This document shows positions 35,501 through 46,447 of a stretch of DNA of 64,000 nucleotides, piece after piece. The DNA is from Chlorokybus atmophyticus (taxonomy: Eukaryota; Plantae; Mesostigma and Chlorokybus algae), in the NCBI GenBank assembly GCA_009103225.1, contig RHPI01003488.1:248001-312000 (forward strand). The letters run 5' to 3'. Position 1 is the stretch's first letter. Every line of letters begins with the position of its first letter. Below the pieces are notes generated by a model. That model did no database searches. It saw only the letters and a list, made by a program, of their open reading frames with translations, and was not told the origin of the DNA. Position numbers and translations under genes: made by a program.

Positions 35501-38500
35501 AGACGGGGACGGTGCGGTTGTCGGCAAATTGATGAACCTACACAGTTGCGGAATCTTTGCTATTTTTCAAGGGCGAGTAGTACCTTTATTGTGGACCTTC
35601 ACAAGCACGGCACAGGGTATTACTAGCTCGTTTTGCTTGGTTGACACCGGGGCAACGCATAACTTCGTCGAGAATAAATGGGTTATGCACAACAAGATAG
35701 CGTGTAAACCCTCAGCCTTCTCAGCTGTTGGTGCTGGAAGTGCGTTACCAGTGAAAGGTAAAATAAGTTGAAAGTGAAGATTGGTAGTTACCAAGCCAAT
35801 TTAACTTTCATCGTAGTACCCATTGACATAGCTAGTGTTGATGTGGTACTTGGCCAAGAGTGGCAACATCAAGTGTCTATGACAATGGATACTGCTGCAC
35901 AGTTCTGCACGGTAAGGAAGGGGCGTAAGAGCAGCACTTTGTCCATGCAGGGGTCGCATAACTTGGAATATAAGCAAACAGACTCTGCGTTACTTACGGC
36001 GCTTCAAGTGAAGCGTGCGTTACGAAAAAGCACACCTGCTTTTCTAATGCACTTAACGTTAAGTGATGATGTAGTGCCTGGCAATACAGAAGGTGTATCG
36101 GACATCATTGAGAGATTTCAGGATGTGTTCTTAGATGAATTGCCGGGCTTGCCCCCTGATCGAGGTGTCGGACACACAATACCTTTGATTCCTGATAGTG
36201 AGCCTCCATTTCGGCCTATATATAGGTTGAGCCCTCGTGAGAGGGGGTTGGAAACACAAATAAAAGAGTTATTGAAGAAGGGATTGATTGAACCAAGTTC
36301 TTCACCCTTTGGCGCACCCATATTGTTTGTTATGAACAAGAATGGGAAATTGCGCATGTGTGTGGATTATCGTGCTCTAAACAAGATCACGGTAAAGAAC
36401 AGATACCTGTTGCCAAGGATTGATGATGTGTTTTACAAGTTGTCAGGGAATGCGTACTTTGGTACACTAAGCTTGACAAGCGGCTATCATCAAACTCAGA
36501 TTCATCCTTTGGATATCTATAAGACAGCATTCAGGACACCTACGGGTCATTATTAATACAAAGTGTTACCTTTTTGATTGACTAATGCACCCGCTGTGTT
36601 TCAGAAGGAAATGAAAAAAATCTTCGGTGGTATGCTTGGTCAACATGTCATAATATATTTGGATGACATCATTGTCTTCAGTAAAACAATGGAAGAACAT
36701 AGGTAACACTTGGAAGCGGTGTTCGCAAGATTGCGCAAGCATCATTTGTTTGCAGATTTCACCAAGTGTGATTGTTGTAAAACGGAGTTGCCCTTTCTTA
36801 GTCACATTGTGAGTGGTGCGGGTATACAACCTGACCCACGCAAAGTGCAGATTGTCAAAGAGTGGCCCCAACCTTAGAATATCCATCAAATAAGTCGTTT
36901 ATAGGGTTGGCAAAGTACTTTCGCAACTTTATGATGGGGTACTCGACAATTGTCATGCCTTTGACCAAGCTGTTGCGTAAAAATGCCCCGTTCACTTGGA
37001 TCACAGCATAAGAAGTTGCTATGCAAAAGGTGCAGTTGGCTTTAACATCGGCGCCGGTGTTAGCACTGTCAATTTGGGACAAACACTTCACAGTGGCTAG
37101 TGACGCATCAACACTTGGGTGTGGTGCGGTACTATTGCAAGATGGTAGACCTTGTGCTTATGAGAGTAGGAAGTTCATTCCTGCGAGAGTGAACTACCCT
37201 ACAACAGAGCAAGAACTACTGGGTATAGTTCATGCTCTTGAGACATGGAGATGTTACTTGGAGGGTGTTCAGTTCACTACTGTGACTGATTACAACCCGT
37301 TGGTGTATATCTCAACACAACAAAACTTGTCGCGACGGCAAGTGCGCTGGAATGAGTTTTTGTCCAGGTTCACCTTTGATTGGGTGTATCGGCCGGTTAG
37401 AACGAATGTGGCTGACCCTTCGAGTCGCTGCCCGTCATTATTGGCGGTGATGCGCGCGCAACTACTCGCGACACGCAGCACATTGTCTCCCGATGATGAG
37501 TTTGTGCAAACTGTTGTTCAGGGGTACACTTTGGACCCGTGGTTTTTCATTGCAGACAACTTATAAAAGGTCGAGAAAGTTTGACAAACGTGACAATCTG
37601 TATTACATGAGCAACAGTGTGGTGATACCTGATCATGCTGAACTGCGTGTAAAATGCATAGCGGATACACATGATCCGCCTTACGCTGGGCACTTTGGTA
37701 GTCGCACAACCATTAAGGCAGCGGAACAGTTGTATTGGTGGCCATCGTTGCCTGCTAATGTGAAGCGGTATGTGGACACGTGTAACAAATGTCAACGTGA
37801 CAAACCGTTACGTAAAAAGCCCGCTGGGCTACTGAGGCCGTTACCACTTCCTGACAGTAAGTGAAAAGTGTGAGTATGGACCTTATCACTGAGCTCCCTG
37901 AGATAGCGTTGGGTCATACTGCGGTTGCAGTATTTGTGGTCCTTTGACCAAAATGGTTCACATTGTTCCTTGCCGTACGGAGATAGGCTCCCATGATTTA
38001 GCGATGTTTTCTGTCGCGTTGATGTTCAATATGCATGGTTTGCCTCGCAACATTGTCTCTGACCGTGACCCGAGGTTCGTGGCTCAGTTTTGAAAGTCGC
38101 TATGCAACTTCCTGCAGATACAACAGCATATGAATACCGCTTATAATCCGCAGATTGATAGTCAGACTGAACGCGCCAATCACGTGATTGAGGAAACCAT
38201 TTGACATTATGCGAGTCCGACTAAGTCTGATTGGGATATTTATCTTCCAATAGCTGAGTTCGCGATTAACAATGCATGGCAAGAGAGCGTGCAGGAAACT
38301 CCATTTTTCTTAAACTACGGAGTGCATCCACAAAGTCCTGCCAGTATAAAATTGCCGGCTAGCGATGTGCCTCGCGATCCTGCAGCGCGCGAGATGGCTG
38401 CGGCCATGCAAGACAGGTTAGCGTTGGCAAAGAGCTATCTGCGCGCAGCGCAAGACAGACAAAAAGCCCAAGCTGATAAGCATCGTAGGCAGGCCGACTA

Positions 38501-43733: not shown

Positions 43734-45203
43734 TCATGCAGCTTTGAACTGATACTTGTAAGCGCGTAGCTTGCTAATCCCATGACGTGTGTCCGCCATC
43801 ACCGACGCGCAGTACCAACACGCCGCCACATAGCTGCATTAGCAAGCCCACGAACGTGTTAGCACCACCACCAATGTCAATCGTGTCTTTCATGGCATGC
43901 ACACACACACACACACAGAGATGCGCACTCACATTGCTGCTCAGAGCCCATATCGATATCCTTACCCGAACGCAGCTGCGGGGGCCCACATTGCATGCAG
44001 CCATTGCTCCCTCCCAACGACCACCCTGATGCAAATACTCTTCAACACCAACAATAACAACGAGTGTAACATATAACACCAGCATGCTGCGAATCTCCCT
44101 CACCTTGAGCTGTGCCATGCCCAGAAGGCAAGTGTGACTGCAGCGAGCGGCAGCGGGAGGAAGCCAACTTGCGATGAAGAAGATGACGATGTTGTGCTCG
44201 CTGGGGATACGAACAGCGCAATGGCGGCGATGCAAAGCGCGGTGCAAGCGAGCATATCTGTGGTTGTGTTTGTGTGTGCATGCAAATTATACACATGCGC
44301 ACGAACGCCACGTGTACAGTGCTAACCAACATACCTGCCGCGATGACTGTGGTGGAAGACAATTCGCCATAGAACAAAGCGTGCCGGTGCTGAATAGATA
44401 GAATTGTAAAGTTGTTGGACAAGTGTTGCGATAGTCCATTGATGTTTGCCTGCAAACAGCAAGCACAACAAGCACGACAAGCATTGTTTGTTTACCACGT
44501 GCCAGGGATGGCGGTGCTGGCTAAGAGCCGCGCGCGAGAAGAGCAGCGCCCCCGCCACCGCCCCCGCAGCAAACGCCGCCTGCGTGTACATGGTTGATGT
44601 TGAGGATGATGAGGAAGTTGCAAAGAAGGCACGGGGGGACTGTTTATTGCGTGCTTGCGTGTGTATGCACGCGTGTGCGCGCGCGTGTGTCTTTGCTTGT
44701 GTGAGAAAGTATGCATGTACAAGATCAAACAAACGGACTTCACAGTGGGCATCTGAATGAACTATGTGCATGTAGGTGTGCATGTGTGCGCGTGCCCGCG
44801 CATGTGCTTGCATGCAATCGTTGCAGCTGCGTGCGCACCGATTCACTACAAACGTGTATCTACGCGCGCTCAGATCTTTGCAAGAACGGCTGGAGTTGAA
44901 CACCTGGTTGCATGCATGCAGTGGTCTTTGTCAACAACACTGACCCTCCAGGCGAGGCTCTGCCTAGCATGACTCCTTTCCAGCTCCCTTATCACCTCCT
45001 CCTGCTCTGTAACCCCACGCAAACAAACAATGTGTGTTGATCTCGAGTGTAGAGTCACAATACGGTTATGATCTCCAGCCCAGGCCAGGCCATATGACGA
45101 TGATACAGCACACACCTTGGGTATCCAAATACTCCGTCTCCTCCGCGCCGCCTCCGCCACCAAAGCTCCCAGCGCCTATCCCTTCAGCTCTCCTACTCCT
45201 CAT
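43734..45203 (-). CDS. Conserved uncharacterised multi-pass membrane protein, 200 aa, 7 exons
   Basis: Exons 45203-45116, 45006-44945, 44579-44496, 44389-44335, 44257-44104, 44025-43966 and 43833-43734; all GT-AG and phase-consistent. EQEEVIRELERSHARQSLAWR...PW..RHA.FY...SKLRAYKYQFKAA resembles a land-plant uncharacterised family (from memory). Confidence 0.88.
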
Positions 45204-45329
45204 CTTCACCACGTACACACCTCCGCCCCTGCCGCCGCCGCCGCCGGCCTGGCCTGATGGCCTGATGCGCTCACAACGGATTACTGAGCACATGCAGATC
45301 ACTGAACAATTGGATCAGTGATCACACAT

Positions 45330-45520: not shown

Positions 45521-46447
45521 ATGGCGGCAGCGGCGGCGTCGGCGATGTCTCTGGGCAGCGGCAGGCTCTTCTCCTCGTCCTCGTCATCCACCTCCTCACC
45601 CTCCTCATCACATGCATTGCCTCGCGCCGCCGCCCCGCGACTGCGACGGAAAGCTGGTAAGCATCCTGTTCTGCTCTAGCCTGGCCTGGCCTGGCCTGGT
45701 CTGACTGTGCTTGTCTCCTCCCTTGCAGTGAGGCGGGCGGCTGAGGCTAGGTGGGGCGCCTCATCAGGCGGCGGTGGCGGCGGCAGCAACAAGGCGAGGG
45801 GCGGCAGCAGCAGGAGGGGAGAAGAAGGGGAGCAGGTGGTTAGCGTCATGTGGCCAACCTCCTTTGATGAGGTACGTGTGCTCAATGCAATGTCGCGTTT
45901 ACACATTCACACATCTCATCATTTACACAGAGTAAAGTGCTCTACTCACGCAGGTGCCTCAAGCCATCGCTGCACTCAGGGAGGGCTCATCAGTCGTGAT
46001 GAACCTCAGCTCCATCGCCAGGTGCATGCACACGCACACCCGTGCCTGTTGCAATGATGTTGGTGATGGTGGTGCACCTCTTTCTTGCCGATCTTCTTGC
46101 ATGGCAGACCTGGTTGATCAATGAGCACTGATGCCTGTGCTGATGCCTGTCTGTGTGTTGAATGCAGCATTGAAGAGCAGCAGCGATGCGTGGACTTTGT
46201 TGCCGGCGGTTGCTTCGCCATGAACGGGTAAGCATGGTGCCCCATAACAGTTGAACGATACTATGCATCACCATATCACCTTGGAATCTCATTCATTGTC
46301 ATCATCAGGCACCAGGACACGCTGTCGGACTCGGTGTTTCTGTTTCTTCCCGCGGGCGTATCAGCAGCCAACATCAACTCGCGCAGGGAGGCGCTGCTGT
46401 GCCTCGGCTCAACGCAGCTCGCCCTTGCCGAAGACCTCGCGCACTGA
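45521..46447 (+). CDS. sepF: SepF (YlmF/Cdv2)-family cell-division protein with a putative plastid transit peptide, 181 aa, 5 exons
   Basis: Exons 45521-45656, 45729-45871, 45954-46021, 46168-46227 and 46309-46447; all GT-AG and phase-consistent. Core PTSFDEVPQAIAALREGSSVVMNL..QRCVDFVAGGCFAMNGHQ..LSDSVFLFLP closely matches cyanobacterial SepF. N-terminus is Ala/Ser/Arg-rich and lacks acidic residues. Confidence 0.9.

What the first reader, a model, noticed from the sequence alone, without database searches (positions are those of the whole stretch)
45521..46447. Nucleus-encoded, intron-containing, plastid-targeted SepF: a retained cyanobacterial divisome component
Seen: four GT-AG introns, a ~50-aa Ala/Ser/Arg-rich N-terminus and a core that matches cyanobacterial SepF motif by motif, embedded among ordinary eukaryotic genes, so it is not contamination. 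Known: SepF bundles FtsZ and anchors it to the membrane in cyanobacteria, Firmicutes, Actinobacteria and archaea; the angiosperm plastid division machinery uses ARC6/PARC6 and has no SepF. Inference: this alga keeps a more cyanobacterium-like Z-ring anchor, perhaps linked to plastid peptidoglycan. The bacterial N-terminal amphipathic anchor is not evident, while a ~30-aa C-terminal extension (INSRREALLCLGSTQLALAEDLAH) could replace it. I recall scattered reports of SepF homologues in some algae and cannot verify how novel this lineage is; function in plastids appears little tested.
Basis: partly seen in the sequence, partly recalled or inferred. Interest (0 to 1): 0.75.

Follow-up and report, generated by a model that had tools for sequence, protein, structure and literature searches.

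The report
Nuclear SepF gene in a green alga
This early-branching green alga (Chlorokybus) keeps, as a spliced nuclear gene, the cyanobacterial cell-division protein SepF, which the papers I could search treat as lost from chloroplasts outside glaucophytes, so its role in chloroplast division can now be tested.

Summary
Window 45521-46447 (+) is a five-exon gene with four GT-AG introns. My exon-by-exon reading equals the public Chlorokybus model jgi/Chlat1/4981 (P0001, 181 aa).

P0001 matches Pfam SepF at 71.7 bits (cut-off 27). Its AlphaFold model overlays solved SepF at Z 14.6. The B. subtilis dimer glycine and the main FtsZ-contact phenylalanine of C. glutamicum are conserved.

Relatives occur in Klebsormidium, Spirogloea, Prasinoderma, Nephroselmis and Chloropicon. 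They form one clade (100/92) inside the group holding all named cyanobacteria. Three core introns match Klebsormidium in codon and phase. The gene is therefore an old nuclear gene, not contamination or recent transfer.

Two things differ from bacterial SepF. The N-terminal membrane-targeting helix is replaced by a Ser/Ala/Arg-rich, transit-like stretch. A green-specific C-terminal helix is modelled on the spot of helix alpha3 of Corynebacterium SepF, a proposed polymerisation switch, so it looks less like a new anchor.

Plastid import, FtsZ binding and a link to plastid peptidoglycan are inferred, not shown.

No paper in the searchable library describes a nuclear SepF in green algae. Databases already auto-label it.

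The scan noted this stretch once more (s1-183854) and has another SepF note on another piece of this genome (s1-186599, unchecked).

The parts
45521..45656 (+). Exon 1: start codon and residues 1-45 plus the first base of codon 46. Ser/Ala/Arg-rich, transit-peptide-like presequence.
   Evidence: 31% Ser, 24% Ala, 11% Arg, no Asp or Glu, 6 basic residues. AlphaFold pLDDT below 55, no secondary structure.
45657..45728 (+). Intron 1 (GTAAGC...CAG, phase 1). Contains a short CCTGG repeat.
   Evidence: Klebsormidium has a phase-1 intron at the matching place of its presequence, with a GC donor.
45729..45871 (+). Exon 2: Gly/Arg-rich linker (residues 46-82) and the start of the SepF core (strand beta1, from 45839).
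   Evidence: The Pfam match of P0001 starts at residue 83. Strand 83-86 has pLDDT above 90.
45872..45953 (+). Intron 2 (GTACGT...CAG, phase 0, after Glu93).
   Evidence: Same codon boundary and phase as the Klebsormidium intron after Glu108.
45954..46021 (+). Exon 3: helix alpha1 and strand beta2 of the SepF core.
   Evidence: On its own it matches PF04472 positions 13-32 at 14.1 bits. Secondary structure.
46022..46167 (+). Intron 3 (GTGCAT...CAG, phase 2, inside the codon of Ser116).
   Evidence: Same aligned codon (Gly131) and same phase in Klebsormidium.
46168..46227 (+). Exon 4: helix alpha2, holding the invariant Arg122, Asp125, Gly129 and Gly136 (first two bases of its codon).
   Evidence: On its own it matches PF04472 positions 35-53 at 20.7 bits. 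Invariant columns come from the 90-sequence alignment. Gly129 aligns with B. subtilis Gly109, the residue changed in PDB 3zii.
46228..46308 (+). Intron 4 (GTAAGC...CAG, phase 2, inside the codon of Gly136).
   Evidence: Same aligned codon (Gly151) and same phase in Klebsormidium.
46309..46360 (+). Exon 5, first part: strands beta3 and beta4 of the core, to residue 153. Includes Phe146, the counterpart of C. glutamicum Phe131, and Thr140 at the place of Lys125.
   Evidence: mapped with the construct numbering in PMC7118173. pLDDT 95-98.
46373..46441 (+). Exon 5, C-terminal helix (residues 158-180) carrying the green-lineage motif of the type R-R-(D/E)-A-L-x-(S/C)-L.
   Evidence: Helix at pLDDT 80-88. 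It overlays alpha3 of 6sat_B, with model 79-170 on chain 65-151, Z 14.6, rmsd 1.7 A and 87 of 87 residues aligned. Among the first 150 hits the motif occurs only in green-type SepFs.
46445..46447 (+). Stop codon TGA.

Best explanation
This is a real, old nuclear gene for a SepF protein inherited from the cyanobacterial ancestor of the plastid.

The proposed mechanism has five steps:
1. The roughly 80-residue Ser/Ala/Arg/Gly-rich N-terminus most likely serves as a transit peptide plus a flexible linker, so the protein is imported into the chloroplast stroma. This is inferred.
2. The core (residues 83-153) folds like bacterial SepF and probably forms the usual helix-mediated dimer. The fold is predicted with high confidence; the dimer glycine is conserved.
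3. The dimer binds the conserved C-terminal peptide of plastid FtsZ and helps bundle or stabilise Z-ring filaments. This is inferred from the conserved phenylalanine of the binding pocket. The basic pocket residue is not conserved.
4. The N-terminal amphipathic membrane helix of bacterial SepF is missing. Tethering to the inner envelope would therefore fall to ARC6/ZipN-type proteins or to an unknown partner. This is inferred.
5. [quoted passage not shown] This rests on predictions only.

The gene survives in several early-branching green lines. According to published surveys it is absent from Chlamydomonas, Physcomitrium, Selaginella and Arabidopsis.
For: Family and fold:
- Pfam SepF at 71.7 bits against a cut-off of 27. 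Exons 3 and 4 hit the model separately.
- AlphaFold gives pLDDT 94-98 over residues 81-150.
- Best structural matches are all SepF. They include 6sat_B (Z 14.6, rmsd 1.7 A, 87/87 aligned), B. subtilis 3zih (Z 14.0) and archaeal SepF at Z 11-13.6.

Key residues:
- Gly129 aligns with B. subtilis Gly109 and is invariant.
- Phe146 aligns with C. glutamicum Phe131, whose F131A change cut FtsZ-peptide binding about 20-fold.

Old nuclear gene:
- Four GT-AG introns.
- Three core introns lie at the same codon and phase in Klebsormidium, and a phase-1 intron sits in both presequences.
- The Chloropicon copy sits on a 1.76-Mb chromosome two genes downstream of an Nckap1 gene.

Cyanobacterial descent:
- In an all-against-all phmmer search of 1.84 billion representatives, the non-algal top hits are cyanobacterial. 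Many are 70-98% identical to named cyanobacterial loci and carry the cyanobacterial N- and C-terminal motifs.
- Core identity is 53-55% to cyanobacteria against 29-34% to Actinobacteria- or Firmicutes-like SepF.
- In the careful tree the green SepFs are one clade (100/92). They sit inside the group with all named cyanobacteria (83/74), apart from the outgroup (99/92).

Transit-like N-terminus: no acidic residue before position 51, and 31% Ser and 24% Ala in the first 45 residues.

C-terminal helix: it overlays alpha3 in two independent models.
Against: - No localisation, binding or expression data exist for Chlorokybus, and no transit-peptide predictor was available here.
- The counterpart of C. 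glutamicum Lys125 is Thr140. It is Arg in cyanobacteria and B. subtilis and Tyr, Cys, Met or Arg in other green SepFs, so the FtsZ pocket is altered.
- No membrane-targeting helix was found, so the family's best-known role as a membrane anchor may not hold.
- The placing of the C-terminal helix is a prediction at pLDDT 73-88, and Klebsormidium lacks the motif.
- The tree has only 73 columns, and its rows were drawn from the best hits to this protein. Few non-cyanobacterial sequences are in it, and the position inside cyanobacteria is unresolved.
- I could not check that Chlorokybus has FtsZ with the C-terminal peptide, ARC6, or the peptidoglycan genes.
Confidence: 0.7

Rival explanations
1. 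The C-terminal helix is a new membrane anchor. Having lost the N-terminal amphipathic helix to the transit peptide, green SepF would tether the Z-ring to the inner envelope through its C-terminus.
For: - The N-terminal anchor is absent while the C-terminal motif is conserved across Prasinoderma, Nephroselmis, Chloropicon-type and Chlorokybus proteins.
- In Chloropicon-type proteins the helix has a hydrophobic moment of 0.40-0.48, like most of the cyanobacterial N-terminal helices sampled (0.41-0.48).
Against: - In Chlorokybus the moment is only 0.12-0.23.
- In the Chloropicon type the mean hydrophobicity is negative.
- Both AlphaFold models dock the helix on the beta-sheet where alpha3 of C. 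glutamicum SepF lies.
- Klebsormidium has no such helix.
Confidence: 0.15
2. The protein is retained but has a changed job or place. It might be a stromal factor no longer tied to FtsZ, or it might be sent to another compartment.
For: - The basic pocket residue (Lys125 of C. glutamicum, Arg in cyanobacteria) is not kept.
- No anchor was found.
- Green lineages divide plastids with ARC6, PDV and DRP5B without SepF in model species (PMC4015805 Table S1).
Against: - The core is under strong constraint. It is 55-59% identical across lines that split very early in green evolution.
- The dimer glycine and the pocket phenylalanine are kept.
- No other function of the SepF fold came up in the papers read here.
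- From my own knowledge, not checked here: green plants have no mitochondrial FtsZ for it to serve.
Confidence: 0.12
3. It is a bacterial contaminant, a recent lateral transfer or a dead gene.
For: The family is otherwise prokaryotic. Only one model of it appears in the protein collection for this genome.
Against: - It has four spliceosomal introns and an open frame that reproduces the public model.
- Intron positions are shared with Klebsormidium.
- There is a monophyletic green clade.
- The Nephroselmis sequence comes from a transcriptome.
- GC content is like that of the surrounding window.
Confidence: 0.02

Closest known systems
Cyanobacterial SepF (Synechocystis Slr2073; Synechococcus elongatus Synpcc7942_2059, also called Cdv2)
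   Same: - Same Pfam domain.
- 53-55% identity over the 73-column core.
- Same invariant Arg, Asp and Gly residues and the same pocket Phe.
- Nearest bacterial relatives by search and by tree.
   Different: - The cyanobacterial protein starts with an amphipathic membrane-targeting helix and ends in a Pro-rich tail with a conserved Trp and an I-A-Q-type end.
- The algal protein has a transit-like N-terminus, no such helix, lineage-specific core residues (W-P-T, E-Q-Q-R, G-G-C) and a C-terminal helix motif not seen in the cyanobacterial hits.
- It is nuclear and spliced.
Plastid-encoded sepF of glaucophytes (Cyanophora paradoxa)
   Same: A SepF kept for an organelle of cyanobacterial origin. It is the only eukaryotic SepF discussed in the papers found (PMC4015805, PMC6330054, 10.1101/109975).
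   Different: [quoted passage not shown] This one has moved to the nucleus and acquired introns and a presequence. I had no Cyanophora sequence by reference, so the two were not compared directly.
Corynebacterium glutamicum SepF (PDB 6sat, 6scp)
   Same: Best structural match, at Z 14.6 with all 87 residues aligned. This includes a C-terminal helix over the beta-sheet at the place of alpha3. Phe131 is kept as Phe146.
   Different: Only 29-33% identity. The C. glutamicum protein has the N-terminal membrane helix, and Lys125 is Thr here. The alpha3-like helix of the alga has an unrelated sequence and is longer (23 residues).
ARC6 / ZipN (Ftn2), the known Z-ring tether of plastids and cyanobacteria
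   Same: From my own knowledge, not checked here: a stromal-side partner of the FtsZ C-terminal peptide that stabilises the Z-ring. In cyanobacteria it acts beside SepF (PMC4164004).
   Different: An unrelated fold, with a J-like domain and a transmembrane protein. It is kept in all green plants, whereas SepF is kept only in some early-branching lines.

Membership tests
SepF (Pfam PF04472, formerly DUF552/YlmF) | Sequence match to the family model above the curated cut-off | tested here: met
   71.7 bits against 27, E 6e-20, residues 83-153 on profile 1-70 of 72. Exons 3 and 4 match separately. NCBIfam gave no hit.
SepF (Pfam PF04472, formerly DUF552/YlmF) | Alpha/beta core: a four-stranded sheet packed against two helices | tested here: met
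   AlphaFold gives strand-helix-strand-helix-strand-strand at pLDDT 94-98. Solved SepF structures fill the first 12 ranks at Z 11.4-14.6, and the next unrelated fold is at Z 9.5. This is a predicted structure, not a solved one.
SepF (Pfam PF04472, formerly DUF552/YlmF) | Glycine at the helix-helix dimer interface (B. subtilis Gly109) | tested here: met
   Gly129 aligns with the residue that differs between 3zih and 3zii (G109K). It is invariant in 90 sequences.
SepF (Pfam PF04472, formerly DUF552/YlmF) | Residues of the FtsZ C-terminal-peptide pocket (C. glutamicum Lys125 and Phe131) | tested here: inconclusive
   Phe131 is kept as Phe146, which is nearly invariant. Lys125 corresponds to Thr140 and varies among green SepFs.
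SepF (Pfam PF04472, formerly DUF552/YlmF) | N-terminal amphipathic membrane-targeting helix followed by a flexible linker | tested here: not met
   The cyanobacterial hits carry the helix at residues 1-14, with moment 0.41-0.48 in most of those sampled. The first 20 residues of P0001 reach only 0.24 and read as a presequence. AlphaFold predicts no helix before residue 83. A linker is present.
SepF (Pfam PF04472, formerly DUF552/YlmF) | Binds FtsZ and localises to the division ring | not testable with these tools
   Needs binding assays and microscopy.
Nuclear gene of endosymbiotic (cyanobacterial) origin for a plastid protein | Spliceosomal introns in a eukaryotic chromosome context | tested here: met
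   Four GT-AG introns, with positions shared with Klebsormidium. A retroelement lies 8-10 kb upstream.
Nuclear gene of endosymbiotic (cyanobacterial) origin for a plastid protein | Groups with cyanobacteria in a phylogeny | tested here: met
   The green clade (100/92) sits inside the group of all named cyanobacteria (83/74), away from the outgroup (99/92). Caveats: 73 columns, few non-cyanobacterial rows, and an unresolved position within cyanobacteria.
Nuclear gene of endosymbiotic (cyanobacterial) origin for a plastid protein | Cleavable chloroplast transit peptide and stromal location | tested here: inconclusive
   The composition fits: Ser/Ala/Arg-rich, no acidic residue before position 51, disordered. 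No predictor and no experiment were available.

The most novel reading that the evidence does not exclude
Green-lineage SepF may be a distinct, undescribed subfamily. It has a transit peptide where the membrane-targeting helix used to be and a new conserved C-terminal helix that works as a polymerisation switch or a partner- or membrane-binding handle. Early-branching green plastids would then still run a cyanobacterium-like Z-ring with both ARC6 and SepF. That state would have been lost separately in core chlorophytes and in land plants, possibly together with changes in the plastid peptidoglycan layer.
Probability: 0.35. Interest if true: 0.7.

Novelty: new variant of a known kind. Interest (0 to 1): 0.55.

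Why it matters
Published overviews of chloroplast division list SepF only for cyanobacteria and for the plastid genome of glaucophytes. Table S1 of PMC4015805 leaves it blank for Chlamydomonas, Physcomitrium, Selaginella and Arabidopsis. [quoted passage not shown] Recent surveys of division genes in green algae start from Arabidopsis or Marchantia queries, so they cannot find it (PMC13519894, PMC10784329).

A nuclear, intron-bearing SepF shared by Chlorokybus, Klebsormidium, Spirogloea, Prasinoderma, Nephroselmis and Chloropicon changes that picture in three ways:
- The gene was moved to the nucleus before the green lineages split.
- It was kept for a very long time.
- It was lost later, more than once.

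This offers a concrete handle on how the Z-ring tether was simplified on the way to land plants. Because this SepF lacks its membrane helix, it also offers a natural experiment on what SepF does apart from anchoring.

The find is modest in one respect. The family is well known, and databases already label these proteins automatically.

Tried and rejected
- Genome scan with a two-sequence alignment. The first scan of bacterial and archaeal genomes used Chlorokybus plus Klebsormidium and found nothing, because the back-translated patterns were specific to the green lineage. The second scan, with a wider alignment, gave 578 confirmed loci, and the 80 best were all cyanobacterial. Its patterns were biased towards cyanobacteria, so I do not count it as independent evidence of origin. 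I used it only to name hits.
- Profile word search. It scored only the 8000 candidates sharing most words and missed even some query members. It says nothing about absence in land plants.
- Quick 145-row tree. It was disturbed by one long branch (P0180) and by one cyanobacterial sequence that I had wrongly labelled green (P0175). I rebuilt it without them.
- Pfam scans of 20 neighbouring ORFs.
- tblastx of the Klebsormidium locus against the whole window. It found only the SepF exon, so there is no conserved gene neighbourhood.
- Genome papers. The Chlorokybus and Chloropicon genome papers do not mention peptidoglycan or FtsZ, so the peptidoglycan link could not be checked there.
- NCBIfam gave no hit.

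Full report
**What is there**

Reading the + strand from 45521 gives an ATG and five coding pieces joined by four introns. The exons are 45521-45656, 45729-45871, 45954-46021, 46168-46227 and 46309-46447. The donors are GTAAGC, GTACGT, GTGCAT and GTAAGC. Every acceptor is CAG. The phases are 1, 0, 2 and 2.

**How I handled the spliced model**

Exon 3 alone matches Pfam SepF positions 13-32 (14.1 bits). Exon 4 alone matches positions 35-53 (20.7 bits). These are two neighbouring parts of one 72-position profile.

I handed no self-joined model to any search tool. Instead, a word search used the open frame window:45707-46054, limited to the residues of exon 2. It returned the public model eukprot jgi/Chlat1/4981/Chrsp32S04959 (P0001, 181 aa). 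Its sequence equals my exon-by-exon reading. All whole-protein work below uses P0001.

It joined the five exons in memory to check that they reproduce P0001, and found one GT-AG model that does so exactly. The same call tried the same joining on the Klebsormidium locus and found no model. Nothing joined was saved, printed or searched.

**Family**

- P0001 scores 71.7 bits (cut-off 27, E 6e-20) on PF04472, with residues 83-153 on profile 1-70 of 72.
- Against the PDB by sequence, it finds C. glutamicum SepF (6sat, E 2.9e-7) and B. subtilis SepF (3zih). A profile of green relatives finds 3zih at 9e-12.
- An AlphaFold model built on a 90-sequence alignment has pLDDT 94-98 over residues 81-150. 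Its order is strand, helix, strand, helix, strand, strand. It has a disordered N-terminal 80 residues and a C-terminal helix at 158-180 with pLDDT 80-88.
- Foldseek and VIA-align put solved SepF structures in the first 12 ranks. Examples are 6sat_B (Z 14.6, rmsd 1.7 A, 87 of 87 residues), 3zih_A (Z 14.0) and archaeal SepF at Z 11.4-13.6. The first unrelated fold follows at Z 9.5.
- Gly129 aligns with the glycine replaced in the B. subtilis G109K dimer mutant and is invariant.
- The construct in PMC7118173 is residues 63-152, which equals the 90-residue chain of 6sat. With that numbering, C. glutamicum Phe131 aligns with Phe146, which is nearly invariant. Lys125 aligns with Thr140. That position is Arg in cyanobacteria and B. 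subtilis and varies among green relatives. The FtsZ pocket is therefore kept only in part.

**Organism and relatives**

The source name of P0001 says Chlorokybus, as earlier notes of this scan also say.

- A word search with the core found one relative, Klebsormidium nitens KFL_000090060. UniRef already calls it 'Cell division protein SepF'.
- A full phmmer search of 1.84 billion representatives gave 1167 hits at E 1e-3 or better.
- Look-ups named Prasinoderma coloniale, Spirogloea muscicola and Nephroselmis pyriformis (from a transcriptome) among the best hits. A profile search added Chloropicon primus.
- Further green-type sequences come from unnamed metagenomes and transcriptomes.

These proteins share core residues that the cyanobacterial ones lack: W-P-T, E-Q-Q-R and G-G-C. 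Most also share a C-terminal motif of the type S-R-R-D-A-L-x-S-L-A-K. Among the first 150 hits this motif occurs in no cyanobacterial sequence. Klebsormidium lacks it.

**An old nuclear gene**

The Klebsormidium gene lies on a 474-kb scaffold and also has four introns. I read its junctions directly.

| Intron | Klebsormidium | Chlorokybus |
|---|---|---|
| 1 | phase 1, in the presequence, GC donor | phase 1, in the presequence |
| 2 | after the Glu of F-S-E, phase 0 | after Glu93, phase 0 |
| 3 | inside Gly131, phase 2 | inside the aligned Ser116, phase 2 |
| 4 | inside Gly151, phase 2 | inside the aligned Gly136, phase 2 |

Chlorokybus and Klebsormidium lie on either side of the deepest split of the streptophytes. 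The gene was therefore nuclear and spliced before that split.

The Chloropicon copy has no intron. It lies on a 1.76-Mb chromosome, two genes downstream of an Nckap1 gene.

**Origin**

- The non-algal top hits of the unbiased search carry the cyanobacterial hallmarks: the N-terminal helix of the type M-S-x-x-F-x-K-L-K-D-F-V-G and a tail ending around I-A-Q.
- Many are 70-98% identical to named cyanobacterial loci. Examples are P0011 at 98.5% to a Leptolyngbyaceae locus and P0025 at 97% to Prochlorococcus.
- Over 73 core columns, P0001 is 53-55% identical to cyanobacterial SepF, 55-59% to other green SepFs, and 29-34% to Actinobacteria- or Firmicutes-like SepF.
- A careful IQ-TREE analysis (81 rows, LG+C20) recovers the 15 green sequences as one clade (100/92). 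The clade sits in a polytomy with all named cyanobacteria (83/74), apart from the outgroup (99/92).

I left out P0180, P0142 and P0016 (long branches), P0175 (mislabelled) and two duplicates. The limits are the short alignment, the few non-cyanobacterial rows and the lack of a glaucophyte sequence.

**The two ends of the protein**

The first 45 residues are 31% Ser, 24% Ala and 11% Arg, with no acidic residue before position 51. A Gly/Arg-rich stretch follows up to residue 82. This fits a chloroplast transit peptide plus a linker, but I had no predictor.

No N-terminal amphipathic helix like the cyanobacterial one is present.

The C-terminal helix overlays alpha3 of C. glutamicum SepF in the Chlorokybus model, with model 79-170 on chain 65-151. 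It does so again in a separate model of the Chloropicon protein, with model 84-184 on chain 63-149, Z 11.5. In C. glutamicum that helix covers the beta-sheet face used for polymerisation and was proposed to act as a switch (PMC7118173).

The Chlorokybus helix is weakly amphipathic, with moment 0.12-0.23. I therefore favour a cap or switch over a membrane anchor. Both remain predictions.

**Literature**

- In the searchable library, sepF of eukaryotes appears only as a plastid-encoded gene of glaucophytes (PMC4015805, PMC6330054, 10.1101/109975).
- Table S1 of PMC4015805 lists SepF for S. elongatus and C. paradoxa only.
- PMC12462475 states that SepF homologues seem absent from Chlamydomonas and speaks of a function lost during plastid evolution.
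- PMC3499364 found none in Nannochloropsis.
- Only two papers hold both 'SepF' and 'streptophyte', and both mean the glaucophyte gene.
- Two recent surveys of plastid division and peptidoglycan genes in green plants do not mention SepF. They start from Arabidopsis or Marchantia proteins.
- They do report peptidoglycan toolkits in Klebsormidium and Chloropicon, two SepF-bearing lines.

Subscription papers are not covered, so an earlier mention cannot be excluded.

**Verdict**

The SepF identity, the nuclear location and the cyanobacterial descent are well supported. Plastid import and action on FtsZ are the most likely reading but are untested. The anchor role is doubtful. The gene is a known family in an unrecognised setting with a changed architecture.

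Noticed in passing
window 35768-37566 (+): ORFs with reverse-transcriptase (PF00078, 28.9 bits) and RT-RNase H domains (PF17917, 105 bits). This is a retrotransposon remnant 8-10 kb upstream of the SepF gene.
   Followed up: partly
window 44322-44903 (-): A 192-residue ORF just upstream of the SepF gene has a weak AA_permease_2 match (E 0.004, below the cut-off). The Klebsormidium SepF gene also has an amino-acid permease gene as a neighbour, but tblastx found no similarity between the two loci outside SepF.
   Followed up: partly
P0028, P0049, P0056, P0060, P0062, P0101, P0104, P0111, P0112, P0121, P0122, P0137 (hits): A second class of SepF-domain proteins. Most are closest to Synechococcus/Prochlorococcus-type loci. 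Each has an N-terminal stretch of the type R-S-H-Q-V-K-V-T-L-N...E-L...L-D ahead of the SepF core, in place of the amphipathic helix. Some are 340-430 residues long.
   Followed up: no
P0016 (448 aa, hit): A protein that starts like a Ser/Thr protein kinase (glycine-loop motif G-A-G-G-F-G) and ends in a SepF domain (residues 369-436). This looks like a kinase-SepF fusion of unknown source.
   Followed up: no
P0042: The nitrogen-fixing endosymbiont or organelle UCYN-A (Candidatus Atelocyanobacterium thalassa) keeps an ordinary cyanobacterial SepF.
   Followed up: no
L081:4200-4670: Intron 1 of the Klebsormidium SepF gene appears to use a GC donor (CAG|GCGAGT) rather than GT.
   Followed up: partly
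same genome, another piece (scan note s1-186599): The scan holds a further first-reader note of a nuclear, intron-containing SepF on another piece of this genome (1121 letters). It may be a second copy or the same gene on another scaffold. The window itself holds one copy only.
   Followed up: no
window 45680-45700 and 45240-45262: Short CCTGG/GGCCT-type repeats lie in intron 1 and in the 5' flank of the gene.
   Followed up: no
P0001 residues 50-58 and aligned places in P0002, P0003, P0004, P0007 (alignment A3): A small conserved spot with a tryptophan lies 25-35 residues before the core in streptophyte, Prasinoderma and Nephroselmis SepFs. The Chloropicon type has E-R-D-P-S/L there. It could mark the mature N-terminus or a vestige of the membrane helix.
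   Followed up: no
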